64,000 nt of DNA from positions 146,612 to 210,611 of the IMG/VR virus record IMGVR_UViG_3300035181_000357. One strand, written 5' to 3'. Positions within the stretch are counted from its first letter, which is position 1. Each line of letters starts with the position of its first letter. Both the position numbers and the translations under genes were made by a program. Below the pieces are notes generated by a model, which was given only the letters and a program-made list of their open reading frames with translations, did not search any database and was not told the DNA's origin. Below, piece by piece: positions 9,867-45,834 of the stretch.

Positions 9867-9870
9867 CATT

Positions 9871-21883: not shown

Positions 21884-22897
21884 ATGCATGAATATGCGAT
21901 CGTCATCGGAAGATTTCAACCCTTCCATCTGGCCCACAAGCAACTGCTCGAGAAAGCGTTCGAGGTTGCGAGTAGGGTCATAATTATTTTAGGTAGCCAT
22001 GCAGCTGCCCAAACTTCCAAGAATCCCTGGACTAGTCAAGAACGAATCAAGATGATCGAGTCGGCTCTGACACAAGAGCAGAGTGATCGCATTACATTCC
22101 TTCCAGTCCGCGACTATCTTTACAATGAGAATGTCTGGTTGTCTGAAATTCAGCAGAAGGTTAAGGTGGTCACCAACAACTCCAAATCGGTCGTGTTGAT
22201 TGGTCACATGAAGGATGAGTCAAGCAGTTATCTCAAGACTTTCCCTCAGTGGGAATTCATTGAGACCAAGGCCGCTTTTGATCTGTCTGCTACTGATATT
22301 CGCCATTCTCTGTTCACCACTGAAGGATGGGCTGACTCAGCTCAAAAAGTTCCTCAGAAGGTGCAAAACTATCTGGTCAACTGGTGCCGAACTTCGGACT
22401 ATGTTCGCCTGAAGGAAGAGTACACCTACCTCCAGAAGTATAAGGCTTCTTGGGCTGTGGCTCCTTATCCTGTGACCTTCGTGACTGCTGACGCTGTCGT
22501 GATCAAGTCTGGTCACGTCCTAGTGGTCAAGCGTGGTGGAAATCCTGGCAAGGGCTTGATCGCTCTCCCTGGTGGATTCGTAAATCAGAATGAAAGCCTT
22601 GATGTGGCTTGCCTTCGAGAGCTCAAGGAAGAGACCAAGATAAAGGTCAGCATGGATAAGCTGACCTCTGCTCGTCAAACCAACCACGTGTTCGACCACC
22701 CACAGCGTAGTCTCCGTGGTCGTACTATCACTTATGCCTACCTGTTCGACTTGGGTAAAGAGGGAGACCTCCCAACCGTCAAGGGTTCAGATGATGCCGA
22801 GACTGCTTTCTGGATGCCTATTGGAGATGTATATTCCAATGAGGCTACCTTCTTCGAAGATCATCGCGACATCATTCTCTATTTCCTCGGCCGATAG
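21884..22897 (+). CDS. nadM: Bifunctional NMN adenylyltransferase / Nudix ADP-ribose hydrolase
   Basis: GRFQPFHLAH, KNPWT, SATDIR, PGGFV...RELKEET Nudix box, GSDDA, FFEDH. Confidence 0.93.
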   Translation: MHEYAIVIGRFQPFHLAHKQLLEKAFEVASRVIIILGSHAAAQTSKNPWTSQERIKMIESALTQEQSDRITFLPVRDYLYNENVWLSEIQQKVKVVTNNSKSVVLIGHMKDESSSYLKTFPQWEFIETKAAFDLSATDIRHSLFTTEGWADSAQKVPQKVQNYLVNWCRTSDYVRLKEEYTYLQKYKASWAVAPYPVTFVTADAVVIKSGHVLVVKRGGNPGKGLIALPGGFVNQNESLDVACLRELKEETKIKVSMDKLTSARQTNHVFDHPQRSLRGRTITYAYLFDLGKEGDLPTVKGSDDAETAFWMPIGDVYSNEATFFEDHRDIILYFLGR

Positions 22898-33380: not shown

Positions 33381-33635
33381 ATGTTCCATGGAAGTACCAG
33401 GAGTGATTTTGCTCTGAGTATGATTCAGGCTCGAGAGATGAACGTGGATCCTGAGATCATGCGATTGCTCGAAGATTTCGAAGCTGCGTACGAACGAGCT
33501 TTCAAGTTTGCGATCGAACTCAAGAAACATAAGAATTTTGAAGACATCGGTGAACTACTCCGGCTTGAACTTTTCGGAGACAAAGAAGCTATCGATGATC
33601 TCTATAAAGAAATCAAAAACCGAAAGAGGGTGTAG
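33381..33635 (+). CDS. Hypothetical protein
   Basis: 84 aa, GAGG SD. Confidence 0.6.
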   Translation: MFHGSTRSDFALSMIQAREMNVDPEIMRLLEDFEAAYERAFKFAIELKKHKNFEDIGELLRLELFGDKEAIDDLYKEIKNRKRV

Positions 33636-33636
33636 T

Positions 33637-34131
33637 TTGAAGAAGTCGCATAAGGTCATCATCCTGGCTGGTATCCCTGGTTCTGGAAAATCCACCTATA
33701 TTGAAGGTCTGATGAAGACTTTCAGTGAAGACATCTCGGTATCTATCGTGTCTGCCGATCACTATTTCATCAAGTACGGTACGTACAAGTATGTGGCACA
33801 TGATATCCCACATGCTCACAAGCAGTGTCAGAACAGGTTCTCTGACGCTCTGGACATGGACGTTGACGTTATCTTTGTAGACAACACCAACATCCTGAGT
33901 AAGCATCGCAAGCCATACGTCCAGGAGGCTCTGGATTGTGGCTATGAGGTTGAGATTCATGCTCTTCCTGCAGATGTCGAGGCTAGTGCAAGTAGGAACA
34001 TTCACGGTGTGGACCTGGATGTCTGTCAGCGAATGTTCGATTCTTTCGATCTGGAGTTTGGAACTATCTACGACCATAAGCGTCAGAAGATTGGGACTAT
34101 CACCAAGGAACAGGTAGGCTTGAGTGGCTAA
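33637..34131 (+). CDS. P-loop polynucleotide-kinase-like protein (AAA_33 type)
   Basis: GIPGSGKST, VSADHYF, VDNTN, RNIHGV. TTG start inferred. Confidence 0.8.
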   Translation: MKKSHKVIILAGIPGSGKSTYIEGLMKTFSEDISVSIVSADHYFIKYGTYKYVAHDIPHAHKQCQNRFSDALDMDVDVIFVDNTNILSKHRKPYVQEALDCGYEVEIHALPADVEASASRNIHGVDLDVCQRMFDSFDLEFGTIYDHKRQKIGTITKEQVGLSG

Positions 34132-34519
34132 ACAGCTATCATGTGGTGTCCTGGTTACACACAAGAATTCACTTCTTCTATGTCATGTAACTGGGACTTA
34201 CAATCGTTGGGATATTCCTAAAGGAATGCCTAATGATGGAGAAGATCACGTAGCTGCTGCTGTTCGAGAACTCAACGAAGAAACAGGGATTGTACTCGGT
34301 GTTAACTACAGAGAGTTGGGTTACACCGAGTACACCAAGACGAAGGATTTGTTCCTTCTCTACCATGAAGGTCTGTACGAAGTATCGGATATGACCTGTT
34401 TGTCGTTCTTTGAAGATGATCGTCCAGAGATGGATGGTTTTAGGTATTTTGATTTTAATGAAATTGTTGGCCACGTCACACCTAATCTGTATAAGGTATT
34501 GACTAAGTTCTTAGGGTGA
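34124..34519 (+). CDS. Nudix hydrolase
   Basis: WDIPKG-x5-E-x7-RELNEETGI. Confidence 0.9.
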   Translation: MAKQLSCGVLVTHKNSLLLCHVTGTYNRWDIPKGMPNDGEDHVAAAVRELNEETGIVLGVNYRELGYTEYTKTKDLFLLYHEGLYEVSDMTCLSFFEDDRPEMDGFRYFDFNEIVGHVTPNLYKVLTKFLG

Positions 34520-34522
34520 GTT

Positions 34523-35614
34523 ATGGAAAGAAAGCTAGTAACTATTAGAGAGATCGCTGCAGTGAATCCTATCCCCGATGCAGATGCCATCGAGGTGGTA
34601 ACTGTAGATGGATGGAAAGTGGTCTCCAAGAAAAATGAGTTCAAGCCAGGAGATCTCTGCCTATACTTCGAGATCGACAGCTTCCTACCTATCAAGCCAG
34701 AGTATGAGTTTCTGCGTAAGAGTAGCTACAAGAAGGTCATCGATGGTACGGAAGGATTCAGACTCAAGACCGTAAAACTGCGTGGTCAGATCAGCCAAGG
34801 TCTGGTTATGCCTATCTCAGAAGATATTCTGAAGACTCTGGCTCCAGTAGCTAGTTCGGATCTCAGGACTCTTCTGGACCAAGATCTCACCGAGTTGTTT
34901 GGTGTGACCAAGTGGGAGCCACCTCTGTCTGCCTGTCTTTCTGGGTTGGTTAAGGGTAACTTCCCATCACATACTCCGAAGTCTGGCCAGGAGCGTATCC
35001 AGAATCTGAAATACTTCTTCGAACTCTATAAAGATGAAGAGTTCGAGATGAGTCTGAAACTCGATGGAAGTTCATGCACTATGTATTTGGATCGAGAGGA
35101 TGTCTTTGGAGTCTGTTCACGTAATCTGGATCTGAAACCAGACGAGAGCAATAGCTTCTGGAAACAAGCCTATATTCATGGTGTTGAAGACAGACTCAAG
35201 ATAATTCATTCTGTATCTGGGTTGAATCTCAGTATCCAAGCTGAATTGGTTGGGGAAGGAATTCAGGAGAACCACGAGAAGATCAAGGGCCAAGATCTGT
35301 ATGTCTTCAATATCTGGGACCAACACCTCGGACGATCCTTGACCCCATCTGAACGACATGCTACACTGGATGCTCTAAACGATCTCCAGGTCTTAGGTTC
35401 CAAGCCACTTAAACATGTCCCTGTAATTGGGTATGAGAAGGTCTTCACCAAGTATCAGACACTAGAAGCTCTCTTTGAATTCGTGGAAAGCCTAGCTGGG
35501 ATGAATCCTGGTGTAATCCTCGAAGGCGTAGTGTTCAAGAGTGTAAGACCTATAAATGGTAGCATTGTAAGCTTTAAGATCGTCAGCAATAAGTACCTTC
35601 TTTCCAAGAAATAA
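34523..35614 (+). CDS. RNA ligase, Rnl2-like (DRB0094 type) with N-terminal OB domain
   Basis: IPDADAIE N-terminus, KLDGSS (motif I), CSRN, QAELVG, FNI, EGVVFK, FKIVSNKYLL. Confidence 0.88.
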   Translation: MERKLVTIREIAAVNPIPDADAIEVVTVDGWKVVSKKNEFKPGDLCLYFEIDSFLPIKPEYEFLRKSSYKKVIDGTEGFRLKTVKLRGQISQGLVMPISEDILKTLAPVASSDLRTLLDQDLTELFGVTKWEPPLSACLSGLVKGNFPSHTPKSGQERIQNLKYFFELYKDEEFEMSLKLDGSSCTMYLDREDVFGVCSRNLDLKPDESNSFWKQAYIHGVEDRLKIIHSVSGLNLSIQAELVGEGIQENHEKIKGQDLYVFNIWDQHLGRSLTPSERHATLDALNDLQVLGSKPLKHVPVIGYEKVFTKYQTLEALFEFVESLAGMNPGVILEGVVFKSVRPINGSIVSFKIVSNKYLLSKK

Positions 35615-36589: not shown

Positions 36590-36664
36590 GTGGCCTTAGC
36601 TCAACGGTAGAGCATCGCCCTTTTAAGGCGAGGGTTGTGGGTTCGAGTCCCACAGGCCACACCA
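36590..36664 (+). tRNA. tRNA-Lys(UUU)
   Basis: Canonical cloverleaf, TCGCC-CTTTTAA-GGCGA, CCA. Confidence 0.95.
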
Positions 36665-37030
36665 TCCGAGGTGGGTTAAGCGTCACTGTGATGGCAGTAC
36701 GGATACCCACAGCATAAACTGCATGATGCTGGTCTTTACCTCCCGATAGTAGAATCTCGAAAGAGACTACTATTATACCCGACAAACCATTCCACTACTG
36801 ACATAGTGGAAACATAAATCGGAGCCGTGTCAGCGGTAATGCGGAACATGAACTATTTGTTGCGATAGTCGTGAGTTCGCCGGGAGTTATTAAATCCCCA
36901 TGTGATGGCTCGTATTAGAGCGAAGGATGCGTAAGCACCCAACAGGCTGAAGATAACACAGCGTATCATATGTTTTTGTTTTAGGAGAGCCCTGTCAGAA
37001 CTCTTCGGAGGAGGGTTAGACTCCCTATTA
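36665..37030 (+). ncRNA. Structured non-coding block B
   Basis: Helices capped by GAAA, GTAA and TTCG tetraloops. Confidence 0.6.
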
Positions 37031-37032
37031 AT

Positions 37033-37108
37033 AGCCCTATAGCTCAGCGGTCAGAGCTGACGGCTCATAACCGTCTGGTCCTAGGTTCGAACCCTAGTGG
37101 GGCTACCA
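37033..37108 (+). tRNA. tRNA(CAU), Ile2/Met elongator type
   Basis: GACGG-CTCATAA-CCGTC, CCA. Confidence 0.9.
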
Positions 37109-37109
37109 A

Positions 37110-37568
37110 ATCGTTTACTAGTTCGATTCTAATAAAAACTAGTCGAGGGGGATGGGTGAAGAATGCTGGTCTCAGGATAGAGACTATTCCCATCGGGTGA
37201 GACCTTATCCAATCTCTTCCTGCAGGAGCCGCGTAAAAAAGTCAAAAGAACCTTGGTGCTACACTATGCGCGAGTTATTGATAAAATCAATAGCGTCTCC
37301 TTTATGGATAGCGGTAGGAATTCGCTGCAAAATCCAAGGCTACCCTACTTAGGCATGCGGTAGGGTAAATTTCTCGAAATCTCAGGTTTCGTTGAACTAC
37401 GAAGTAACTGTACCGTAGTGAGGAATCTGTGACAGCGACATGGGTCGGGCCATGGCTGGCGACACCAGCTAAAAAGATGTTCCTGTGGGAAGGGTAACGT
37501 ATACTTTCTTCAGAAGACGTGCCAGTCCGGCTGGTGTCCAGCATGTATCTACCTCTACTGGACTTAAA
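37110..37568 (+). ncRNA. Structured non-coding block C
   Basis: Dense helices and alternative pairings, no credible ORF. Confidence 0.55.
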
Positions 37569-37653
37569 GCTCCCATGGCGGAATTGGTAGACGCTACGGA
37601 CTTAAAATCCGTCGCCTATGGGCATCCCGGTTCGACTCCGGGTGGGAGCACCA
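37569..37653 (+). tRNA. tRNA-Leu(UAA)
   Basis: Class II cloverleaf, CCA. Confidence 0.95.
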
Positions 37654-37832
37654 AACTGTTCTCTGTTACAGTCTTAACAGAGTGGTCCAGGCGGGGAAAT
37701 TCCCCATCCGTAGTCCCTATGCTACAGAAGGTCATAGGGTGGTGGAGGCGGTGTGACCTCGGTCATGCTTCTAGGTGTCGGGTGCGTAAGCAACATGACT
37801 CGAGTCAGATCCTCTAAGTCTGACATATTTCT

Positions 37833-38170
37833 GGGCCTGACAAGGTTTCGACAGGTTGTTAGCTTGGGATTGCGGTGCAGGGACTGGTTGATCAGCAGGC
37901 CAGTATAAAAGCAGATCAAACTTTAATTGCCGAGCCACAGCTCGCACTAGCAGCTTAAACACTGCTACGAGGAACCGCGAGAGGACAGTAGCGGGGAATC
38001 GTCACCACCGTCCTAGTTTCTACTAAGAGTTCGGGTAAGTAGGAGCGAAACTACGCGATCAAACGATAGTAGGCTGTCAGTCGCCGACCTATCGAGACCA
38101 GACTGACTAACCCTGTGAATGACTTCAATACAACTCTTCTTGGACGTGGGTTCGAATCCCACCAGGTCCA
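37833..38170 (+). ncRNA. ssrA: tmRNA, tag AEPQLALAA
   Basis: GGGCCTG..GGTTTCGAC 5' end, T arm, G3.U70 pair, tag ORF 37929-37958; CCA not encoded. Confidence 0.93.
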
Positions 38171-38676
38171 CATCGGTAGACTTCCTAGTTCTTACGGAGA
38201 ATAGGAACATGGAAGTCTACCATACAACCCTCTAAGATAATGGATGGACAAGAGGTAGGAAATTCCCTAGCGATAGGGATTAAGATCGGCGAGTGCCGAT
38301 ATACGGAGGTAGTTATGGCTACTGAACCAGAGGACAACGACGGTCTACTCGGGACCGAGCGTGAATCAGATGAAGAAGGTTGTCCAGATTATGACAAGGA
38401 CGACGACGAGTAACACTGTACCATAATACCGGGGATGGGGACGACAGGCCCATACAAAGCAGATCCATAGTGTAAAAACTATGGGTGATGAAAGTCTGCC
38501 ATGTCAGTTGATTCTCTAGACTGACAAACCTTAAGTTGGATGCAAACGGAAGACGACTCGCCATCGACCCCAGGCACATGGGGAACCACGGCCTTTCCCA
38601 GATAGCGTAGTGGCCCTACGACGATGCGTGGAAGGTGGGATTATTCCCTTAAAAGCACTGTGTCATCCAACTACTT
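38171..38676 (+). ncRNA. Structured non-coding block E
   Basis: Many helices, including long-range GTTGGATG/CATCCAAC. Confidence 0.55.
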
Positions 38677-38754
38677 GATCCCATCGTCTAAACTGGTTTA
38701 GGACAGTAGCCTCTCAAGCTGCAGATCCGGGTTCGAATCCCGGTGGGACCACCA
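38677..38754 (+). tRNA. tRNA-Glu(CUC)
   Basis: GTAGC-CTCTCAA-GCTGC, CCA. Confidence 0.9.
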
Positions 38755-38756
38755 AG

Positions 38757-38843
38757 GCCGAGGTGCCAGAGTGATTGAATGGGCAGGTTTTGTAATCCTG
38801 TAGAGAAATCTCGTCATGGGTTTGAATCCCATCCTCGGCTCCA
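38757..38843 (+). tRNA. tRNA-Thr(UGU) with long variable arm
   Basis: Loop TT-TGT-AA, G1-C72/C2-G71, U73, V-arm GAG-AAAT-CTC. Confidence 0.75.
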
Positions 38844-39011
38844 ATCAAAATTTATTTCATAAAAGTTATCTTCCAGAGATTGTAGTTCGTAATTAATGAA
38901 TTATGTGGTCATGGCCACGCGAATTCCCTTTGACAATTTCATAGAGATCAAGCACACGAGCTCTGCTGTAGAGTCTAACGATTCTGGCACACATGCCGTG
39001 TGTATTTATTA

Positions 39012-39096
39012 GGTAGGGTGGACAATGGTCGTCAAGCGGCTTTGAATACCGTCGCTCCGAGAGGAGTTGCAGGTTCGAATCCTGTCCCTACCGCCA
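39012..39096 (+). tRNA. tRNA-Ser(UGA)
   Basis: Long V-arm, G73, CCA. Confidence 0.9.
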
Positions 39097-39105
39097 ATCT
39101 TTAAT

Positions 39106-39183
39106 GGCCCAGTACGCTAATTGGCAGATGCGGTAAGTTTCAAAAACTTGTGGTTGTCGGTTCGAATCCGACTTGGGCTACCA
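39106..39183 (+). tRNA. tRNA-Leu(CAA), short variable loop
   Basis: TAAGT-TTCAAAA-ACTTG, A73, CCA. Confidence 0.8.
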
Positions 39184-39185
39184 AT

Positions 39186-39274
39186 GGAAGATCGGCACAG
39201 TTGGAGAGGTGCGCCAGTTTGCTAAACTGGTAGATGTAACAGTCTAGAGGGTTCGATTCCCTTATCTTCCGCCA
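39186..39274 (+). tRNA. tRNA-Ser(GCU)
   Basis: CCAGT-TTGCTAA-ACTGG, long V-arm, G73. Confidence 0.93.
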
Positions 39275-39467
39275 AAGTCGTCGCTCGCAAAGCGGAGAGA
39301 GGTAAGTAAGACAGATTAATGGTCTAGAACATCCTGTCAGAGAATACCTTGTAGGTTCAAATCCTACCTTGACAACAATACGCAACGCCATAGAAAAGCC
39401 TTCATCTTAATAGGGATGGGGGGGAAACCCTCGCTGGCTTTTCACCACTTTCGTTGCATTCTTATTA

Positions 39468-39541
39468 CGGTCACTGGCGCAGCCTGGTAGCGCACCTGCT
39501 TTGGGAGCAGGGGGTCGAGTGTTCGAATCACTCGTGGCCGA
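39468..39541 (+). tRNA. tRNA-Pro(UGG), no encoded CCA
   Basis: CTGCT-TTGGGAG region, C1-G72, canonical D arm. Confidence 0.88.
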
Positions 39542-39580
39542 CATCGTGATCTAGACTTAGGTTTAGATCACACAATATCT

Positions 39581-39657
39581 CGGGGTGAAAGTGAGCCTGG
39601 TACACGGTCTGGTTTGGAACCAGAAGATCGTCGGTTCAAATCCGACCTCCCCGACCA
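39581..39657 (+). tRNA. tRNA-Pro(UGG), second divergent copy
   Basis: TCTGG-TTTGGAA-CCAGA, CCA. Confidence 0.85.
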
Positions 39658-39692
39658 ATATCAAACTTTATAATTATATGTAGAGGACTATC

Positions 39693-40049
39693 ATGTTCAA
39701 AGCTAAACTACTAAAGACTGCATCAAGTCCACAATTGACTCTGGCTCAACAAGTCTATGCTCAACATAAGGCAGAGATAGATCCTAAGATTTTCAAGGCT
39801 GCTGACTATGTAGTTGATAATGCTATCGATCTAGATTCTGAAACTGCAGATAATCATCTATTTGGTGATGCTATATTTGAGCCATGGTTTGAAGCCAGCC
39901 CAGAATATCTCAGTATGACAGAAGAATCTGGGAACGAAGATGACGAGACCGATTATATTGGTGGTGTCTGGGAACAAGTTCTGTCTACAAATCCAAAGTA
40001 TAAAGATGTCGTAGCTAAATTTGCTGACATCAGAATCAATGGATATTAA
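39693..40049 (+). CDS. Acidic hypothetical protein starting MFKAKLLKTAS, inserted in the tRNA array
   Basis: AGAGG SD and late-type motif upstream. Confidence 0.75.
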   Translation: MFKAKLLKTASSPQLTLAQQVYAQHKAEIDPKIFKAADYVVDNAIDLDSETADNHLFGDAIFEPWFEASPEYLSMTEESGNEDDETDYIGGVWEQVLSTNPKYKDVVAKFADIRINGY

Positions 40050-40055
40050 TATCAT

Positions 40056-40134
40056 GGAGTGCTAGGGGAGTCAGGCCGTCCCCAGTTGCTTGTCACGCAA
40101 CAGATCACGGGTTCGAATCCCGTGCACTCCGCCA
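40056..40134 (+). tRNA. tRNA-Asp(GUC)
   Basis: GTTGC-TTGTCAC-GCAAC, G73, CCA. Confidence 0.92.
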
Positions 40135-40254
40135 TTCTCTCTAGAAATAGAGGATCATGAGTTGGGTAGAATCCACGTCTGAGGGACGTTAGGTGTCTGC
40201 TGTGCTGCAGCGAGAAACCCCACTAGCAGACCCTGTCTCATGATCAAATATCAT

Positions 40255-40331
40255 GCTCCGTATGCTGAAGTTGTCGAGGCGTTGGTCTGCAAAACCAATC
40301 TTAGCCAGTTCAAGTCTGGCACGGAGCTCCA
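40255..40331 (+). tRNA. tRNA-Cys(GCA)
   Basis: TTGGT-CTGCAAA-ACCAA, U73, CCA. Confidence 0.93.
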
Positions 40332-40360
40332 AATTCGTAATGCCCTTTAGAAGCTTTCAT

Positions 40361-40453
40361 CCACTATAAGGACGTTATCGGAGGTTCGAATCCTCCTCCC
40401 GGAACCAATATCTTATTTTTCATTCCGGGATAGCTTAGTGGCCTAAAGCACGT
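40361..40453 (+). ncRNA. Circularly permuted tRNA-like gene (3' half before 5' half)
   Basis: T arm, TCCCGGA-A-CCA, 16-nt linker, TCCGGGA, D arm, CGT. Confidence 0.75.
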
Positions 40454-40493
40454 AAAAGAGCTTTTTTACTATTTTCATTGCGAAGCCTATTAT

Positions 40494-40579
40494 GGTCCAG
40501 GAGTCCAACGGTTGAGACAGCACGCTGTTAACGTGCCGCTGTAAAAGCACATAGGGTTCAACTCCCTACTGGATCGCCA
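40494..40579 (+). tRNA. tRNA-Asn(GUU) with long variable arm
   Basis: GCACG-CTGTTAA-CGTGC, V-arm GCT-GTAAA-AGC, G73. Confidence 0.85.
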
Positions 40580-40630
40580 TCGGGTAATGATCCCAAGAGA
40601 TATATCAAAGAAGCAAATGAATTTATCCAT

Positions 40631-40718
40631 GCATCAGCGGCAGAGTTGGAGGGCTGCAACGGTCTGTAAAACCGTCGGGTTGATCCCCTAGTAGGTTCGA
40701 GTCCTACCTGATGCACCA
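40631..40718 (+). tRNA. tRNA-Tyr(GUA)
   Basis: ACGGT-CTGTAAA-ACCGT, long V-arm. Confidence 0.93.
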
Positions 40719-40720
40719 AA

Positions 40721-40795
40721 GTCGATAGTGGACGAGGGACGTCCGGGAGTCTTCTAAACTCCATTCTCCGGGTTCGAGTCCTGGTATCGACACCA
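40721..40795 (+). tRNA. tRNA-Arg(UCU), intact
   Basis: GGAGT-CTTCTAA-ACTCC, CCA. Confidence 0.88.
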
Positions 40796-40799
40796 ATTT

Positions 40800-40891
40800 C
40801 CCGGTGTGATGTACGGTTGCATAGGTGGCTTTATACCCCACTCGCGCCAGATTAGCGCCTTGTTAGGGTTCGACTCCCTACGCCGGGACCA
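40800..40891 (+). tRNA. Atypical class II tRNA, anticodon ambiguous (UUA possible)
   Basis: Acceptor, D, V and T arms and CCA present; anticodon arm GGTGG-CTTTATACC-CCACT. Confidence 0.6.
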
Positions 40892-40969
40892 ATTCTTGAT
40901 AACGCCTTCGAATCAGGTTTCATCCATTAAATGAAAAGCCTGTTCATCCTGTTCTTCGTTATCATCCAC

Positions 40970-41043
40970 TGCGCTGTCGTCTAGTGATAAGGCAAGAGAC
41001 TTTGACTCTCTGAACGTAGGTTTGATTCCTGCCAGCGTAACCA
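40970..41043 (+). tRNA. tRNA-Gln(UUG)
   Basis: U1-A72, AGAGA-CTTTGAC-TCTCT. Confidence 0.9.
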
Positions 41044-41165
41044 TCGATTAACTTTCTTTTGAGAGTTCATCAAAATATCATCATCAGTATACTTCCAACC
41101 TGTTGGTAAAATAGAAGGGCTGTTGATGTTAGCACGACTGTTCGACTCAGCCTCGTGCGAAATAT

Positions 41166-41240
41166 GGGCTATAGGAATTAAAGGTTGTTCGCATGACTGA
41201 AAATCATGAGGAGGCGGTTCGATACCGTCATAGCCCACCA
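41166..41240 (+). tRNA. tRNA-Phe(GAA)
   Basis: CATGA-CTGAAAA-TCATG, CCA. Confidence 0.88.
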
Positions 41241-41242
41241 AC

Positions 41243-41322
41243 GTCCGGGTACGCAAATCTGGCAAAGCGACTATCCTCAGAAGGTAGTGACTCTGTGGGT
41301 TCGACTCCCACCTCGGACACCA
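41243..41322 (+). tRNA. tRNA-Leu(CAG), short variable loop
   Basis: CTATC-CTCAGAA-GGTAG, CCA. Confidence 0.85.
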
Positions 41323-41403
41323 ATCAATGCAGATGTACGCTATCTGGTATCTCGGAAATCCTGAAAAGGTTGTGTTTTTAGCACACCGTAACAGGCTTCC
41401 ATC

Positions 41404-41490
41404 GCGGATATGGTGGAACTTGGTAGACACGCAGCTTTGAGATGGCTGTCCCGAAAGGGGGTGGGGGTTCGAGTCCCCCTATCCGCACCA
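41404..41490 (+). tRNA. tRNA-Leu(GAG)
   Basis: Class II cloverleaf, CCA. Confidence 0.92.
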
Positions 41491-41588
41491 ATGTTAGGGG
41501 TTAATGCGGTAGCTGACGCAAGAAACAGTCGCTTCCCCAACATGGAGAGAATCTTGCGTGACTCTCCTCACCTTGTGCGATAAAATAT

Positions 41589-41662
41589 GGGTCCTTAGTT
41601 AAGCGGGATAACTTCTGGTTTGCATCCAGACATCGGGAGTTCGATTCTCCCAGGATCCACCA
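41589..41662 (+). tRNA. tRNA-Ala(UGC)
   Basis: G3.U70, TCTGG-TTTGCAT-CCAGA. Confidence 0.92.
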
Positions 41663-41665
41663 TAT

Positions 41666-41749
41666 GGGGCTGAAGTGACTTTGGTAAGCACACCGTTAGG
41701 GCGTACGCCGAACGGAGGTTATGGGTTCGATTCCCGTCATGTTCCACCA
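41666..41749 (+). tRNA. Ala-identity tRNA-like RNA with masked anticodon (6-nt insert)
   Basis: G3.U70, A73-CCA, D and T arms; arm CCGTT-AGGGCGT-ACGCCG-AACGG. Confidence 0.65.
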
Positions 41750-41755
41750 ATCAAT

Positions 41756-41841
41756 GCATCGGACGCAGAACTGGTTGCTGCCCCAGACTCTTAATCTGGT
41801 TCCTAACGGACTTGGGGGTTCGAATCCCCTCCGATGCACCA
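41756..41841 (+). tRNA. tRNA-Lys(CUU) with long variable arm
   Basis: CCAGA-CTCTTAA-TCTGG, V-arm TCC-TAAC-GGA, A73. Confidence 0.85.
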
Positions 41842-41847
41842 AATATC

Positions 41848-41924
41848 AAGGAGTTGGCCGAGGCTGGCATAGGCGATGGTTTGTGGTACCATACACAGGG
41901 GTTCGAATCCCCTACTCCTGACCA
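41848..41924 (+). tRNA. tRNA-His(GUG), A73 and no G-1
   Basis: ATGGT-TTGTGGT-ACCAT, CCA. Confidence 0.8.
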
Positions 41925-41978
41925 ATTTTTAGGATGTTTTAAACTTCCTGATGCTACTATAGTGAATATGGAGTTTAA

Positions 41979-42977
41979 ATGTCCCATGATAATTATGTCG
42001 TAAAGGTTGGAAACGATTATGTAGAAAGAAGTGCCTTTGTAATCGCTGATTCTACAGATCCTCTTGCTGTTGCTCGTGTTACTAACACTGCTCCTGGAGC
42101 TAGTGATTATGGCGTAGTAGTCAGAATGATCGGTACTGTCTCTGTCACTGGTGGTGGCGGTGGTGCTGTCTATGGACCTTCGTCCCTAGGTGTGGTATTA
42201 TCAAATCCTCCAGTAGCAATTGGTGGAGTTGATGCTGGAGGCTTGTTAAGAGTTATCAGGACTGACGCTGCTGGATATGGGCTAAACATGATTACCAATG
42301 GTACGCAGTTCATGCCCACCATGGATGCTGCGGCTCGTCGTGGTTACATGACTCACACAGATGGTACGAACTCCATGCCAACTGGTGATGCTGTTGCTCG
42401 TGGTATTTATCATCGTATTACGGATGGTGTTACACAAGTGGCCGTTAAAGCAGCTTCGACTGCTGCTGTCGCTGCTGATCCTGCCTTGGTAGTAGCGCTG
42501 TCTCCAAACAATAACACTGCTGCCCTAGCCTGGTTTGAGAAGATCACTGATGGAACAAATACTGCAGCTGTTAAAGCTTCTACTACTGTAGCTGCTATTA
42601 CTGATCCTGCCTTGGTTACGACTCTGAGTCCTAACCTTCCTGTTCCAACGATGAGCACTATCTCATCTGCTGCGACAACGAATGCTACATCTGTTAAAGC
42701 ATCTGCTGGAACCGTATTCAATATCGTATGTTCTAATACTGGTGCTGCTGCTGCGTATGTCAAGTTCTACAACAAGGCTTCTGCTCCTACAGTCGGTACA
42801 GATGTTCCTGTATTTACATTGACCATTCCAGCTTCTGGCTCAGTAATAATCCCTGCATCGTTGATTGGTATTAGATTTGCTACTGGTATTGCTCTGGCAA
42901 TTACCAATTTAGCAGCTGATTCTGATACAACGGCTGTAGTCTTAAATCAAGTCAAAGTAATGACATCCTATATTTAA
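41979..42977 (+). CDS. Ala/Thr-rich repeat protein, probable fibre/decoration protein, inside the tRNA array
   Basis: Repeats ITDG..AVKA(A/S)T..A..DPALV..LSPN and MPT.DA.AR.G. Confidence 0.7.
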   Translation: MSHDNYVVKVGNDYVERSAFVIADSTDPLAVARVTNTAPGASDYGVVVRMIGTVSVTGGGGGAVYGPSSLGVVLSNPPVAIGGVDAGGLLRVIRTDAAGYGLNMITNGTQFMPTMDAAARRGYMTHTDGTNSMPTGDAVARGIYHRITDGVTQVAVKAASTAAVAADPALVVALSPNNNTAALAWFEKITDGTNTAAVKASTTVAAITDPALVTTLSPNLPVPTMSTISSAATTNATSVKASAGTVFNIVCSNTGAAAAYVKFYNKASAPTVGTDVPVFTLTIPASGSVIIPASLIGIRFATGIALAITNLAADSDTTAVVLNQVKVMTSYI

Positions 42978-42995
42978 TAGGATGGTGGTACTACT

Positions 42996-43069
42996 GCGGG
43001 TGTAGCTCAACGGTAGAGCTCCTGGTTTCCACCCAGATGACGAGGGTTCAATTCCCTTCACCCGCTCCA
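42996..43069 (+). tRNA. tRNA-Gly(UCC)
   Basis: GCGGGTG acceptor, U73, CCA. Confidence 0.95.
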
Positions 43070-43080
43070 TTTTTCTCCAT

Positions 43081-43158
43081 AGAGGGTAACGCGAAGTGGT
43101 TGAGCGGCCAGCCTTTCAAGCTGTCGATTAGCGGGTTCAAATCCCGTACCCTTTACCA
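43081..43158 (+). tRNA. tRNA-Glu(UUC)
   Basis: Loop CT-TTC-AA, CCA. Confidence 0.88.
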
Positions 43159-43186
43159 AAGATTCTAAATTTTCGTTGAATTTTAT

Positions 43187-43263
43187 GTCCCCATAGCTGA
43201 GTCTGGCCTTAGCACCGTTCTACGAAAGCGGAGACACTGGTTCAAATCCAGTTGGGGATACCA
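43187..43263 (+). tRNA. tRNA-Arg(ACG)
   Basis: CCGTT-CTACGAA-AGCGG. Confidence 0.9.
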
Positions 43264-43266
43264 ATT

Positions 43267-43341
43267 GCCAGCAAACCCGAATGGTGAGGGGGATGTCTCA
43301 TAAGCATCTTGTCAAGGGTTCGAATCCCTTTGTTGGCACCA
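43267..43341 (+). tRNA. tRNA(CAU) Met/Ile2
   Basis: GATGT-CTCATAA-GCATC, CCA. Confidence 0.88.
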
Positions 43342-43346
43342 CCAAT

Positions 43347-43434
43347 GGAAGATCGCCGAAGTCGGAGCGTCGGAACAGCCTGGAAAGTTGTGGCCGTCAA
43401 AGGCCAGAGAGTTCGAATCTCTCATCTTCCGCCA
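43347..43434 (+). tRNA. tRNA-Ser(GGA)
   Basis: Long V-arm, G73. Confidence 0.92.
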
Positions 43435-43561
43435 TTGAAGAAGAAGAATAAGAATAAGAAGGGTGACCAGAGCGTGATTAATCTGGTTTCATAAAGGTGA
43501 GCTTCCTACATCTTATAAAGATGCACTGCTCGTTACTGTCAGTTCTCAGAAATAAGTTTAT

Positions 43562-43635
43562 TCCAGATTCATTCAAAGGTAGGATGGGAGTTTCTGAAGC
43601 TCTTAATGATGGTTCGAATCCATCATCTGGATCCA
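43562..43635 (+). tRNA. tRNA-Gln(CUG)
   Basis: U1-A72, loop TT-CTG-AA. Confidence 0.85.
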
Positions 43636-43669
43636 TCTAGTGTGTAGCATACATCTATATTTAATCTAT

Positions 43670-43743
43670 TGACCTGTAACTCAATGGCAGAGTAATCGAC
43701 CGATAATCGATAAATGGCAGTTCGAATCTGCCCAGGTCAACCA
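43670..43743 (+). tRNA. tRNA-Ile(GAU) with C33
   Basis: ATCGA-CCGATAA-TCGAT. Confidence 0.88.
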
Positions 43744-43777
43744 ATCCTCTTAGATTTAAATACCAAATAGGAGTAGT

Positions 43778-43918
43778 ATGCAGTTACTAGGTGTGATATC
43801 CATAGTAATCTTCAGCTTATGGTTAGTCTTCAGAAAGAAGAAATGCCATGACTGTGCTAATTCCTTCTGTAAGAATGGGTCTGTGGTGCTAGCGGGAACA
43901 CGCTTGAATGGCATTTAA
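43778..43918 (+). CDS. 46-aa membrane/Cys peptide overlapping tRNA-Ala(GGC)
   Basis: TAGGAG SD; MQLLGVISIVIFSLWLVFRKKKCHDCANSFCKNG... Confidence 0.45.
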   Translation: MQLLGVISIVIFSLWLVFRKKKCHDCANSFCKNGSVVLAGTRLNGI

Positions 43919-43951
43919 GAGTTAAGGGTTCGACTCCCTTCAGATCCACCA
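43877..43951 (+). tRNA. tRNA-Ala(GGC)
   Basis: G3.U70, A32-U38, CCA. Confidence 0.88.
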
Positions 43952-43954
43952 ATA

Positions 43955-44023
43955 CATCCGATATCAAACGGTCAGATACCAGACTTTTAATCTGGAGAGG
44001 CTTGACTCCCACCGGGTGCCCCA
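43955..44023 (+). pseudogene. Degenerate tRNA-Lys(UUU)
   Basis: CCAGA-CTTTTAA-TCTGG intact but T arm eroded. Confidence 0.55.
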
Positions 44024-44039
44024 GTTCTTGTTGGTTCAT

Positions 44040-44114
44040 GGCCCTTTAGCTCAGTGGTAGAGCGGCTTCTTTACACGGAGAAGGTCGGCGGTTCAATCCC
44101 GTCAAGGGCTACCA
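44040..44114 (+). tRNA. tRNA-Val(UAC)
   Basis: Loop TT-TAC-AC, canonical D and T arms. Confidence 0.9.
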
Positions 44115-44118
44115 AAAT

Positions 44119-44191
44119 CGGGAGATAGCTTAAGTGGTAGAGCGGTCTTTGCGCAAGATAGATGGTGCTTCGAGAGCATCTCTCCCGGCCA
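44119..44191 (+). tRNA. tRNA-Arg(GCG), rare isoacceptor
   Basis: Loop TT-GCG-CA, G73, CCA. Confidence 0.7.
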
Positions 44192-44195
44192 ATAT

Positions 44196-44270
44196 GCCTC
44201 ATTAACTCAGCGGAAGAGTTCTGGTCTTCGAAACCAGCAGTCGGCGGTTCGAATCCGTCATGAGGCACCA
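44196..44270 (+). tRNA. tRNA-Arg(UCG)
   Basis: CTGGT-CTTCGAA-ACCAG. Confidence 0.92.
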
Positions 44271-44306
44271 ACTTCGATGTATTATAATGTAAAGTATCTT
44301 TGAAAT

Positions 44307-44385
44307 TGCGGGTGGACTGGTCGGCAATCAGGCGATGTCTCATAAGCATTGTAAAACGGAGGTTCAACTCCCCGACCCGCTACCA
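44307..44385 (+). tRNA. Atypical tRNA-Met(CAU) with 1:72 mismatch and bulged T stem
   Basis: Loop CT-CAT-AA, ACCA end. Confidence 0.65.
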
Positions 44386-44444
44386 AATTTGCAGTACCCT
44401 CTCTTCCAGCTTTATACAGCCGCTAGCTGGACGGCTTTAGCCCC

Positions 44445-45212
44445 ATGTGGGTAGGAGATAGCATGATGCATTATAACAACTCAATCGTAACGATTCTAGA
44501 TGCAAAGACTAAGAATCAATTCCGGGAATATGATCATATAAGACAAGGAAACTTGAGTCAGGTAACTGTCCGAGTTCCTTTTGGATCTGAATATTTATTC
44601 CGTTTTAAATTTCCTGATCAGAAACGTCGTCGGCTTGAGATATCAATCGATGGTACTCTGGTTACAGACAATCTCATCATCACTGATGGTAGTGAACTAG
44701 AGAGATTTGTTGAATCTGATAAAAGATTCAAGTTCGTGGAAGCATCGAATGATGCCGTATCCGATCCAGGTTCTCCATCAAATGGAAAGATCGAGATAAA
44801 GCTCTTTGAAGAATCCCTTCCAATCACCCATCTGACTAAGACCTGGAATGACAACGTTATCTATCGGCCAATCAAAGGTTATCCTGGACCAGGATGTGAG
44901 ATCACATGTTCCTCCTATTCCTCAGATATGAACTTGAATGTCTATAATACTAGTAGCTGCAATGCTTCAAACGTTCTTAGAAGTATGGCATCTAATGACA
45001 TCGGAGCTACGGTAGAAGGATCTAGATCTAAGCAAGAATTTGGATCAACTACATGGCAAGGTGATTCTTTCTGTAGTACTTTCATCTTCTGGATGAAGGG
45101 TAAGCAAAATGATACAAAAGAAGATAAGTTCTGTAGCTCTTGTGGTAACAGTATTCGTAGTGCTGCAGATCGTTTCTGTTCAAAGTGTGGCAACAAAATT
45201 TCTAGAACTTAG
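44445..45212 (+). CDS. Hypothetical protein with C-terminal double Zn ribbon
   Basis: FCSSCG ... FCSKCG; start uncertain. Confidence 0.7.
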   Translation: MWVGDSMMHYNNSIVTILDAKTKNQFREYDHIRQGNLSQVTVRVPFGSEYLFRFKFPDQKRRRLEISIDGTLVTDNLIITDGSELERFVESDKRFKFVEASNDAVSDPGSPSNGKIEIKLFEESLPITHLTKTWNDNVIYRPIKGYPGPGCEITCSSYSSDMNLNVYNTSSCNASNVLRSMASNDIGATVEGSRSKQEFGSTTWQGDSFCSTFIFWMKGKQNDTKEDKFCSSCGNSIRSAADRFCSKCGNKISRT

Positions 45213-45248
45213 AAACACTTAATCGTAAGTGTTATCTAAGAGTGTCGT

Positions 45249-45629
45249 ATGGATTTTGAGTATGGAAGCCTTGATAGGGACATTGATATGGAGCATAGGA
45301 ATCTATGCTCCATATTAGATGATATCACAGAAGCTATCAAGACTCAAGGCCTAATAGAGCCTCTTTTAGAACAGCTATTACACGATAGTGTTATTCATTT
45401 CAAAAATGAAGAAGCTAAAATGCAATTCTATAAGTTCCCTCGTGAAGAATATGAAAGACACAAAGAAGCTCACATTAAACTTATCTCTGTATTCGAAGAG
45501 ATGTTAGAACGCTACACAAATTCTCCTGTGAGGAATTATATCTATTACAGGTTTGTGGATTCATGGCTCAAAAATCATTTCAAGGGCATGGATTCAAAAT
45601 TCGCTGACTTCTTGAATAATAAGAAGTAA
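45249..45629 (+). CDS. Bacteriohemerythrin-like protein
   Basis: IDMEH, HFKNEE, HKEAH, WLKNHFKGMD. Confidence 0.88.
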   Translation: MDFEYGSLDRDIDMEHRNLCSILDDITEAIKTQGLIEPLLEQLLHDSVIHFKNEEAKMQFYKFPREEYERHKEAHIKLISVFEEMLERYTNSPVRNYIYYRFVDSWLKNHFKGMDSKFADFLNNKK

Positions 45630-45641
45630 TAACTAGTTACT

Positions 45642-45717
45642 GGTTCCGAAGCTCAATGGTAGAGCAAGGAGTCTCTAAAACTTCTGGCTGTGGATTCGAA
45701 TTCCACCGGAATCACCA
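45642..45717 (+). tRNA. Amber suppressor tRNA (CUA)
   Basis: AGGAGT-CTCTAAA-ACTTCT, normal D and T loops, A73-CCA. Confidence 0.88.
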
Positions 45718-45834
45718 AATCAAGGGAGAATAGTATGACTGGAAGATCACACCTCTAGGTCCTAGCTCGCTCGCCATGACCTTATAGTATATGTCTGTTG
45801 CTAACTAAGCCTACATATTCTAAAGGAGAAAACA

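What the first reader, a model, noticed from the sequence alone, without database searches (positions are those of the whole stretch)
41666..41749. Alanine-identity tRNA whose anticodon is masked by a self-complementary 6-nt insert
Seen: G3.U70, A73-CCA, intact D and T arms. The arm reads CCGTT-A-G-GGC-G-T-ACGCCG-AACGG; ACGCC is the reverse complement of GGCGT, so the GGC anticodon is folded into a hairpin. A32/U38 match the intact Ala(GGC) at 43877. Known: AlaRS needs G3.U70 and ignores the anticodon. Inference: chargeable but non-decoding RNA (decoy, Ala donor or regulatory RNA).
Basis: partly seen in the sequence, partly recalled or inferred. Interest (0 to 1): 0.62.

Follow-up and report, generated by a model that had tools for sequence, protein, structure and literature searches.

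The report
Disabled alanine tRNA gene in phage
One slot of a phage's 42-gene tRNA cluster holds an alanine-type tRNA gene whose anticodon loop is closed by a 6-base palindromic insertion and whose acceptor stem is also damaged, so it is most likely a recently broken spare tRNA, not a purpose-built decoy.

Summary
The described sequence is real. Window 41666-41749 is an 84-nt tRNA-shaped gene in a tight slot between tRNA-Ala(UGC) and tRNA-Lys(CUU). It has G1-C72, G2-C71, G3.U70, A73 and an encoded CCA, a perfect T arm, a 5-bp anticodon stem and a 13-nt loop holding the perfect 10-nt palindrome GGCGTACGCC. Folding predicts that 3 bp (GGC/GCC) plus a GUAC tetraloop bury the would-be anticodon. 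There is no U33, G4.U69 replaces G4-C69, and an extra bulged U sits in the 3' acceptor strand. ARAGORN does not call the gene, and Rfam's tRNA model gives 19 bits against a threshold of 29. Of 47 bacterial sequences sharing its T arm and 3' end (mostly tRNA-Ala genes), none has the extra base and only two have T at position 69. The only syntenic relative goes straight from Ala(UGC) to Lys(CUU) with no such element, and no homolog turned up elsewhere. The palindrome runs through its own centre, which is the mark of a DNA-level templated inverted duplication. Best reading (0.6): a redundant tRNA-Ala paralog recently disabled, probably still transcribed and processed. A functional, chargeable, non-decoding mimic stays possible (about 0.2) but has no support from conservation, and the acceptor-stem damage argues against it.

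The parts
41666..41749 (+). Whole tRNA-Ala-derived, non-decoding tRNA-like gene (84 nt, encoded CCA)
   Evidence: Sequence. Cloverleaf MFE. Rfam tRNA 19.2 bits, full-length model alignment. Not called by ARAGORN.
41666..41672 (+). Acceptor stem 5' strand GGGGCTG, identical to canonical bacterial tRNA-Ala
   Evidence: 36 of the 47 bacterial sequences sharing the T arm and 3' end start with GGGGCTG.
41675..41691 (+). D arm: 3 bp plus A.G, loop CTTTGGTAA with G18 G19; C at the place of A14
   Evidence: one non-standard pair flagged.
41693..41715 (+). Anticodon arm: 5-bp stem CCGTT/AACGG enclosing a 13-nt loop
   Evidence: Stem pair probabilities 0.88-0.98.
41700..41709 (+). Perfect 10-nt palindrome GGCGTACGCC, predicted as a GGC/GCC helix plus GUAC tetraloop that buries the GGC triplet
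   Evidence: Unique in the window. Inner helix p of about 0.94.
41721..41737 (+). Canonical T arm (5 bp, loop TTCGATT)
41738..41745 (+). Acceptor stem 3' strand, 8 nt instead of 7: bulged T at 41740, T69 at 41742 (G4.U69), T70 at 41743 (G3.U70)
   Evidence: Among the 47 bacterial sequences with this T arm and 3' end, none has the extra base, 45 have C69 and 2 have T69.
41746..41749 (+). Discriminator A73 and encoded CCA
   Evidence: Most tRNAs of the array end in an encoded CCA.
41589..41662 (+). Upstream neighbour tRNA-Ala(UGC), separated by a 3-nt spacer
41756..41841 (+). Downstream neighbour tRNA-Lys(CUU), separated by a 6-nt spacer
43877..43951 (+). Intact tRNA-Ala(GGC), the closest paralog in the array; it makes the element redundant for decoding

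Best explanation
The element is a tRNA-Ala gene copy (GGC-type by its loop remnant) that has lost decoding function. It is a tRNA pseudogene, or relic, sitting in an otherwise working phage tRNA array. SHOWN: its acceptor 5' strand, T arm and 3' end are those of ordinary bacterial tRNA-Ala genes. It differs by +6 nt in the anticodon loop, loss of U33, C69 to U, and +1 U in the 3' acceptor strand. INFERRED: the loop insertion arose at the DNA level as a templated inverted duplication. ACGCC is the exact reverse complement of the adjoining GGCGT with no spacer, as expected from snap-back or quasipalindrome template switching on the imperfect inverted repeat that every anticodon stem-loop forms. 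The array also carries an intact Ala(GGC) and an Ala(UGC), so the loss was tolerated and further lesions accumulated in the acceptor stem. It lies 3 nt and 6 nt from its neighbours with no terminator between them, and it keeps the T arm and CCA. It is therefore probably still co-transcribed and cut out by RNase P and 3' processing, giving a stable tRNA-shaped RNA with no dedicated role. Whether AlaRS charges it is unknown.
For: Derivation from tRNA-Ala comes from a GTDB scan for its T arm plus 3' acceptor strand, which returned 47 bacterial sequences. Thirty-six of them start with GGGGCTG at tRNA-Ala length (74-77 nt). The best match, an Ala(CGC) gene, shares 64 of its 76 positions. The lesions are these: none of the 47 has the extra acceptor base and 45 have C69; the loop is 13 nt and no contiguous 6-nt deletion restores U33; ARAGORN rejects the gene; Rfam gives 19.2 bits, while 38 of the 39 RF00005 hits in the array score 35-76. 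Two independent structural lesions, one of them in the helix AlaRS reads, fit relaxed constraint. Redundancy: intact Ala(GGC) at 43877 and Ala(UGC) at 41589. Non-conservation: in the only syntenic relative, L017 (neighbour ORF 67% identical), the order is Leu-Ala(UGC)-6 nt-Lys(CUU) with no element, and no L017 tRNA-like sequence resembles it. Targeted scans of IMG/VR, JGI metagenomes and GenBank phages found no homolog. DNA-level origin: the palindrome is perfect through its centre (GT|AC), which an RNA hairpin does not need (1 in 16 by chance) but an inverted duplication produces automatically. Template switching that extends inverted-repeat arms and creates RNA hairpins is documented (PMC7202029, PMC3820800, PMC8794818). 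The array is in flux: near-identical strains (99.9%) carry different Ile(UAU) cassettes. Precedent: the tRNA cluster in each terminal repeat of phage XacN1 holds 26 tRNAs, two CUA suppressors and one tRNA pseudogene (PMC5852040).
Against: The stems are still well paired: anticodon stem 5 of 5 and T stem 5 of 5, with an intact T loop, G18 G19 and CCA. Any decay is therefore slight or recent. Phage genomes usually purge useless DNA, although 84 nt costs little. The insertion yields an ordered hairpin, not a disordered loop. The Ala core (G1-C72, G2-C71, G3.U70, A73) survives. With only one distant relative available, absence there cannot separate recent decay from recent gain of a new function. 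There are no expression or charging data.
Confidence: 0.6

Rival explanations
1. It is a functional, AlaRS-chargeable but non-decoding tRNA mimic. The RNA is processed like a tRNA and charged through G3.U70. It then serves as a decoy or sponge for host tRNA-targeting defences or tRNA-binding proteins, or as an alanine donor outside translation.
For: The Ala core determinants are present (PMC9976931). AlaRS does not read the anticodon, and non-canonical tRNAs with G3:U70 insert alanine in vivo (PMC5389517). The stems, T loop and CCA are preserved. The closed hairpin is thermodynamically favoured. The phage invests heavily in tRNA maintenance: a kinase, a NUDIX protein, an RNA ligase, an RlaP-family nucleotidyltransferase, a CCA-adding-type enzyme and a tmRNA. 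That fits the tRNA arms race described in PMC10264068 and PMC11464382.
Against: The acceptor helix, the only part AlaRS needs, is itself damaged: G4.U69 replaces the G4-C69 determinant and there is a bulged U that none of the 47 bacterial sequences shows. G20 is absent. The element is missing at the syntenic site of the closest relative, and no homolog was found anywhere. A decoy for anticodon nucleases would need an anticodon loop, which this RNA lacks. None of the 29 window ORFs scanned against Pfam matched an aa-tRNA-dependent transferase or an AlaRS.
Confidence: 0.2
2. It is a structural or regulatory RNA element that does not depend on charging. The tRNA-shaped body provides processing and stability, while the palindromic GGC-GUAC-GCC arm acts as a protein-binding hairpin or a self-dimerisation (kissing or extended duplex) module.
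For: The palindromic arm strongly favours an intermolecular duplex in silico: -33.6 kcal/mol for the dimer against 2 x -9.5 for two hairpins. Uncalled tRNA-like genes with palindromised anticodon arms recur in other phage contigs: L027, L046, L067, L081/L117 and L107.
Against: Those other elements share neither the Ala acceptor nor any common sequence. An arbitrary control palindrome (GGCTAGCC) retrieved as many such elements as GCGTACGC did. The recurrence therefore points to a common mutational route, not a family with a conserved motif. Any palindrome gives a favourable dimer energy. There is no partner and no conservation.
Confidence: 0.1
3. It is still a decoding tRNA, either with an expanded anticodon loop or after removal of the 6 nt at the RNA level (for example by a nuclease plus the phage RNA ligase).
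For: An RNA ligase and a kinase are encoded just upstream of the array. The GGC and CGC triplets, both alanine anticodons, are present in the loop.
Against: No 6-nt excision gives a loop with U33 and a purine at position 37. The triplet is paired with p of about 0.94. ARAGORN with the intron option finds nothing. No bacterial mechanism is known for excising a 6-nt insert from a tRNA (own knowledge). Intact Ala(GGC) and Ala(UGC) tRNAs already exist.
Confidence: 0.03

Closest known systems
tRNA pseudogenes / tRNA-like relics inside large phage tRNA clusters (e.g. Xanthomonas jumbo phage XacN1, PMC5852040)
   Same: It is one tRNA-like sequence that fails canonical criteria among dozens of working tRNAs covering nearly all amino acids, alongside a CUA suppressor tRNA. 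It has the same tight spacing and orientation as its neighbours.
   Different: The lesion type here is explicit: a palindromic +6 in the anticodon loop and +1 in the acceptor stem. The Ala core determinants are still present. The nature of the XacN1 pseudogene was not examined here.
Canonical bacterial tRNA-Ala (GGC/CGC/UGC isoacceptors)
   Same: The acceptor 5' strand GGGGCTG, the T arm and the 3' end are identical (up to the two acceptor lesions), including G3.U70 and A73-CCA. The best match shares 64 of its 76 positions.
   Different: The loop is 13 nt without U33. It has G4.U69, a bulged U, C at position 14, and a length of 84 nt instead of 74-76 nt.
tmRNA tRNA-like domain
   Same: It has an alanine-type acceptor with G3.U70 and a T arm, and does no anticodon-based decoding. 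Rfam's tmRNA model hits it weakly at 20.4 bits, as it also hits the intact Ala(GGC).
   Different: It has a D arm and an anticodon arm but no mRNA-like domain and no tag ORF. The phage has a genuine tmRNA at 37833-38171.
Non-canonical 8/4 and 9/3 tRNAs, some with G3:U70 and a bulged acceptor (Mukai et al., PMC5389517; review PMC7609411)
   Same: They occur in bacteria and phage tRNA clusters. Some carry the AlaRS determinant on an unusual body, and some have one bulged nucleotide in the acceptor stem. An 8-bp acceptor / 4-bp T-stem pairing is possible here (A8-U65 p=0.35 against A49-U65 p=0.32).
   Different: Those tRNAs keep a 7-nt anticodon loop and decode. This element does not.
Quasipalindrome template-switch mutations that extend inverted repeats and create RNA hairpins (PMC7202029, PMC3820800, PMC8794818)
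   Same: An imperfect inverted repeat (the anticodon stem-loop) in highly transcribed DNA has gained an exact reverse-complement copy of the adjacent bases, giving a spacer-less perfect palindrome.
   Different: The mechanism is inferred from the sequence signature only. No ancestral allele is available to show the event.

Membership tests
Canonical tRNA (Rfam RF00005 / ARAGORN) | Score at or above the curated threshold; called by a tRNA finder | tested here: not met
   Rfam gives 19.2 bits against a gathering score of 29. ARAGORN makes no call by default, with introns allowed, or at -ps80. Only a spurious call appears at -ps60.
Canonical tRNA (Rfam RF00005 / ARAGORN) | 7-nt anticodon loop with U33 and an accessible anticodon | tested here: not met
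   The loop is 13 nt and position 33 is G. The GGC triplet is paired with p of about 0.94.
Canonical tRNA (Rfam RF00005 / ARAGORN) | Cloverleaf with a 7-bp acceptor, D arm with G18 G19, and T arm with a TTCRANY loop | tested here: inconclusive
   The T arm and G18 G19 are met. The acceptor has 7 pairs only if a U is bulged out, with tandem G.U. The D stem has 3 bp plus A.G, with C at position 14.
Bacterial tRNA-Ala identity set (A73, G2-C71, G3.U70, G4-C69, G20; PMC9976931) | G3.U70, G2-C71, A73 | tested here: met
   Read directly from the sequence and the predicted pairing.
Bacterial tRNA-Ala identity set (A73, G2-C71, G3.U70, G4-C69, G20; PMC9976931) | G4-C69 and G20 (minor determinants) in a regular acceptor helix | tested here: not met
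   The pair is G4.U69, there is a bulged U after pair 5:68, and position 20 is U. Forty-five of the 47 bacterial sequences sharing the T arm and 3' end have C69, and none has the bulge.
Bacterial tRNA-Ala identity set (A73, G2-C71, G3.U70, G4-C69, G20; PMC9976931) | Actual aminoacylation by AlaRS | not testable with these tools
   This needs an in vitro charging assay or in vivo acid-gel / periodate tRNA-seq.
tRNA pseudogene | Clear descent from a tRNA gene plus lesions incompatible with decoding | tested here: met
tRNA pseudogene | No purifying selection / not conserved in relatives | tested here: inconclusive
   The element is absent at the syntenic site of the single relative L017. Same-population contigs are 99.9-100% identical and so uninformative. 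No closer relatives exist in the databases searched.
tmRNA (RF00023) | tRNA-like domain plus an mRNA-like domain with a tag reading frame; score at or above 47 bits | tested here: not met
   The score is 20.4 bits, with the whole interior of the model deleted. The element is 84 nt and has no ORF.
8/4 non-canonical tRNAs (PMC5389517) | 8-bp acceptor stem with a 4-bp T stem, and a functional 7-nt anticodon loop | tested here: not met
   The 8/4 pairing is possible but ambiguous. There is no 7-nt loop.

The most novel reading that the evidence does not exclude
A phage-encoded alanine-accepting tRNA mimic whose anticodon arm has been deliberately closed into a hairpin. It would be processed and charged like tRNA-Ala but unable to decode, and would be used against host tRNA-directed immunity or as a non-ribosomal alanine donor. 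A wider form of the idea is that 'palindromised-anticodon' tRNA-likes, also seen in other phage contigs (L027, L046, L067, L081/L117, L107), form a functional class and are not mutational debris.
Probability: 0.15. Interest if true: 0.7.

Novelty: new member of a known kind. Interest (0 to 1): 0.27.

Why it matters
If it is a relic, as argued, its value is practical and modest. It shows how a phage tRNA gene can be knocked out in one step by a templated palindromic insertion in the anticodon loop. It also warns annotators that a G3.U70/CCA signature alone does not make a working or purposeful tRNA. If instead the RNA is charged and maintained, it would be a natural non-decoding aminoacyl-tRNA mimic in a phage that carries an unusually full tRNA maintenance kit. 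That would bear on how phages deal with tRNA-targeting defences. The available data favour the ordinary reading.

Tried and rejected
1. Homologs in GenBank phages. Blastn of the region and of the element alone found only generic T-arm matches.

2. Anchoring on neighbouring proteins in IMG/VR. Relatives of ORF 41979-42977 sit in contexts without tRNAs, and relatives of the RNA ligase are only 32% identical and also lack tRNAs.

3. Protein database search plus contig look-ups. These gave the same phage in sister samples (uninformative) and one true syntenic relative, L017, which lacks the element. L018 has tRNAs but no synteny.

4. DNA pattern for the anticodon arm plus T arm in IMG/VR. Only the window's own contig matched.

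5. Pattern for acceptor, D stem and anticodon stem with a free loop length in JGI metagenomes. The seven hits are copies of one gut-bacterial, non-tRNA sequence, so they are chance matches.

6. Palindrome plus T loop in IMG/VR. L027 carries the same 10-mer in an uncalled tRNA-like gene, which looked like a family. However, the broadened scan and a control palindrome gave similar numbers of such cases, with no shared acceptor or motif. I rejected this as evidence of homology.

7. Reading the element as a tRNA with an intron, or as Tyr(GUA). ARAGORN calls it only at a 60% threshold, and the call is spurious.

8. Degenerate tRNA-Trp. The array lacks Trp, but the element has no similarity to L017's Trp(CCA) and no CCA triplet in the loop.

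9. Y-RNA-like or mascRNA-like readings. Rfam scores are 11-13 bits, far below threshold.

10. Promoter and terminator scan. Counts are at shuffle level, and no terminator separates the element from its neighbours.

11. Folding z-score. At 0.06 it is not informative.

12. Assembly artefact. Rejected, because the sequence is identical in four assemblies.

Full report
Setting. The window is the last 64 kb of a 210.6-kb phage contig, IMGVR_UViG_3300035181_000357. Between 36.5 and 48 kb it carries a one-strand array of 40 ARAGORN-called tRNAs plus a tmRNA, and one more tRNA at 43267-43338 that only Rfam finds. The array covers 19 amino acids (no Trp) and includes a CUA suppressor. Around it the phage encodes a P-loop kinase, a NUDIX protein and an RNA ligase (33508-35614). 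Downstream lie an RlaP-family nucleotidyltransferase, a poly(A)-polymerase/CCA-adding-type enzyme and an RNase T-like exonuclease. No GenBank phage is related at the DNA level.

The observation. It has the acceptor 5' strand GGGGCTG, G3.U70, A73 and an encoded CCA. It has a canonical T arm, a perfect 5-bp anticodon stem (CCGTT/AACGG) and a 13-nt loop, AGGGCGTACGCCG. It fills a tRNA slot exactly, 3 nt after the CCA of Ala(UGC) and 6 nt before Lys(CUU). GGCGTACGCC (41700-41709) is a perfect 10-nt palindrome. Such palindromes occur at chance density in the window (74 against 69 expected), so one inside this loop has p of about 0.005. Its 8-nt core occurs nowhere else in the window. The MFE is a cloverleaf. 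The inner GGC/GCC helix closed by a GUAC tetraloop has pair probability 0.93-0.95 and is 7 kcal/mol better than an open loop. The would-be GGC anticodon is therefore buried, though by 3 bp and not 5. The first seven loop bases match the loop of the intact Ala(GGC) at 43877 in 5 of 7 positions.

Position 33 is G, and no deletion of six contiguous bases restores a loop with U33. Pair 4:69 is G.U, giving tandem wobbles. The 3' acceptor strand has 8 nt, so a U (41740) must bulge out for pairs 6:67 and 7:66 to form. The D stem has 3 bp plus A.G, and C stands where A14 is expected. ARAGORN does not call the gene by default, with introns allowed, or at 80% thresholds. Rfam's tRNA model gives 19.2 bits against a gathering score of 29, whereas 38 of the 39 RF00005 hits in the array score 35-76 bits. 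The weak tmRNA hit (20.4 bits) only reflects the alanine-type acceptor and T arm. The intact Ala(GGC) gets the same kind of hit.

Descent. A scan of 185,579 GTDB genomes for the element's T arm plus 3' acceptor strand allowed an optional extra base and C or T at position 69. It returned 47 bacterial sequences. Thirty-six begin with the same GGGGCTG at tRNA-Ala length, 74-77 nt. Forty-five have C69, two have T69 (these look like tmRNA 3' ends), and none has the extra base. The best match, an Ala(CGC) gene, shares 64 of its 76 positions with the element. The element is thus an ordinary tRNA-Ala body carrying four derived lesions: +6 in the anticodon loop, loss of U33, C69U and +1 U in the acceptor stem. 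Its D stem differs from those tRNAs by paired, compensatory changes. The lineage therefore evolved for a long time as a structured tRNA before these lesions arose.

Relatives. The adjacent 332-aa ORF has only one full-length close relative among 5.8 billion proteins (67% identity). Its contig, L017, is syntenic: a tRNA array, the ORF homolog, hemerythrin and an AdoMet decarboxylase-like gene. There the order is Leu, Ala(UGC), a 6-nt spacer, Lys(CUU). Nothing lies between Ala and Lys. None of L017's 25 tRNA-like sequences resembles the element, including three that ARAGORN missed or that score low. Three further assemblies of the same phage are 99.9-100% identical and carry the identical element. 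This rules out an assembly artefact but says nothing about constraint. Pattern scans of IMG/VR and JGI metagenomes found no homolog.

A false lead worth recording. Scanning IMG/VR for the 10-nt palindrome upstream of a T loop turned up L027. It is an uncalled tRNA-like gene in another phage's 30-tRNA array, and its anticodon arm is TGGCGTACGCCA. I tested whether this marks a family in two ways. I broadened the search to the 8-nt core (49 loci), and I ran a control with an unrelated palindrome of the same composition, GGCTAGCC (52 loci). Both returned a handful of odd tRNA-like genes whose anticodon arm is a perfect palindrome. The test set gave L027, L046, L052 and L067. The control gave L081/L117, L107 and L118. 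These share no acceptor type and no motif. GCGTACGC is therefore not special, and the L027 match is best taken as coincidence. The recurrence does suggest that palindromisation of the anticodon arm is a common way for phage tRNA genes to break or change.

Mechanism. The anticodon stem-loop is an imperfect inverted repeat in heavily transcribed DNA. In the element, ACGCC is the exact reverse complement of the immediately preceding GGCGT with no spacer, so the palindrome runs straight through its centre. An RNA hairpin does not need self-complementary loop bases (1 in 16 by chance). A snap-back or template-switch event during DNA synthesis produces exactly this pattern. Such events are known to extend inverted-repeat arms and to create RNA hairpins (PMC7202029, PMC3820800, PMC8794818). 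The palindrome is still perfect and the stems are still paired, so the event is probably recent. The array also holds intact Ala(GGC) and Ala(UGC) tRNAs, so loss of decoding in this copy would be tolerated. The array is demonstrably in flux, because 99.9%-identical strains carry different Ile(UAU) cassettes.

Verdict on function. I consider a recently disabled, redundant tRNA-Ala paralog the best explanation (0.6). It is probably still co-transcribed and processed. No terminator separates it from its neighbours, although the promoter and terminator scans were at background level. The strongest argument against a purpose-built chargeable mimic is that the only region AlaRS reads is itself damaged. 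G4-C69 and G20, two of the five bacterial determinants (PMC9976931), are missing, and the helix carries a bulge that none of the 47 bacterial sequences shows. In addition, a decoy for anticodon nucleases would need the loop that this RNA has lost. None of the 29 window ORFs scanned against Pfam matched an aa-tRNA-using transferase or an AlaRS. The mimic hypothesis is not excluded (about 0.2). The Ala core survives, AlaRS tolerates unusual bodies (PMC5389517), and the phage is clearly engaged in tRNA maintenance, as in the conflicts described in PMC10264068 and PMC11464382. A charging-independent structural or regulatory role gets about 0.1, and residual decoding about 0.03.

Comparison and novelty. 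The closest known things are tRNA pseudogenes in large phage tRNA clusters. XacN1, for example, has 26 tRNAs, two CUA suppressors and one pseudogene per terminal repeat (PMC5852040). The element fails the membership tests for a canonical tRNA, for tmRNA and for the 8/4 tRNAs. It meets the descent-plus-lesion criteria of a pseudogene, and the conservation criterion is inconclusive for lack of relatives. I file it as a new member of a known kind and score its interest as low to moderate.

Noticed in passing
window 38757-38843, 40494-40579, 40800-40891, 41756-41841; L017 1737-1825; L018 6703-6789: Four tRNAs have long (class II-like) variable arms but anticodons of class I families: Thr(UGU) 87 nt, Asn(GUU) 86 nt, Ile(UAU) 92 nt and Lys(CUU) 86 nt. 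The long Thr(UGU) recurs in L017 and L018. For Ile(UAU) the kept Rfam hit is tRNA-Sec (30.8 bits). A long variable arm is a SerRS determinant in bacteria (PMC9976931), so misassignment or allo-tRNA-like behaviour (PMC5389517) is worth testing.
   Followed up: partly
window 45642-45717: An amber-suppressor tRNA (anticodon CUA, labelled Pyl by ARAGORN, 57 bits in Rfam) sits inside the array, as in XacN1. Its amino-acid identity and any TAG-containing phage genes were not examined.
   Followed up: no
window 36590-48034: The array covers 19 amino acids but has no tRNA-Trp(CCA). The relative L017 has one at 9869-9942, just upstream of the homologous ORF. The other 146 kb of the contig were not available to check.
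   Followed up: partly
window 40796-40889 versus L014 299-429: Two otherwise 99.9%-identical strains carry different Ile(UAU) tRNA cassettes at the same slot (94 nt against 131 nt, not alignable apart from a GCCAGATTAGC stretch). This shows gene-level turnover in the array.
   Followed up: partly
window 33508-35614, 52431-53435, 53664-54911, 60458-61165: The window holds a tRNA/RNA maintenance gene set: an AAA_33 P-loop kinase, NUDIX, an RNA ligase (PHA02142 OB fold plus RNA_ligase), an RlaP RNA-repair nucleotidyltransferase, a PolyA_pol/CCA-adding-type enzyme and an RNase T-like exonuclease. Together with the tmRNA at 37833-38171 (tag AEPQLALAA), this suggests pressure from tRNA-cleaving host defences.
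   Followed up: partly
window 21884-22897 and 23238-24650: A NadR-like cytidylyltransferase-NUDIX fusion lies next to a nicotinamide phosphoribosyltransferase. This is an NAD salvage pair of the kind phages use against NAD-depleting defences (own knowledge).
   Followed up: no
window 43267-43338: This tRNA with a CAU anticodon scores 57 bits in Rfam but is missed by ARAGORN. It is the third CAU tRNA in the array, so fMet, Met and lysidine-Ile roles are possible.
   Followed up: no
window 58587-59300 and 59583-60461 (minus strand): IMP dehydrogenase/GMP reductase is split into two adjacent ORFs. The downstream piece starts with a weak intein-splicing-domain match. This may be a split or intein-interrupted gene.
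   Followed up: no
L027 1694-1781; L046; L067; L081/L117; L107 (IMG/VR contigs): In other phage or prophage contigs, tRNA-like genes uncalled or miscalled by ARAGORN (one as Tyr(GUA)) have an anticodon arm that is a perfect 12-16-nt palindrome, or an expanded 12-nt loop with a palindromic core. A control palindrome found as many as the test palindrome did. This looks like a recurrent mutational outcome, or an unrecognised class.
   Followed up: partly
L017 9722-9803 and 11086-11161: L017 holds a Val(GAC)-like tRNA with a 14-nt D loop containing TACGTA (47 bits in Rfam, missed by ARAGORN). It also holds a tRNA-His without G-1 and with A73, the type described for a group of alpha-proteobacteria and their phages (PMC5389517). 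The latter is a possible hint to the host.
   Followed up: no
window 45249-45629, 46611-47279, 48581-48976: Hemerythrin-domain, pentapeptide-repeat and AdoMet-decarboxylase-like ORFs are interspersed in or next to the tRNA array. The hemerythrin and AdoMet_dc genes are syntenic in L017.
   Followed up: no
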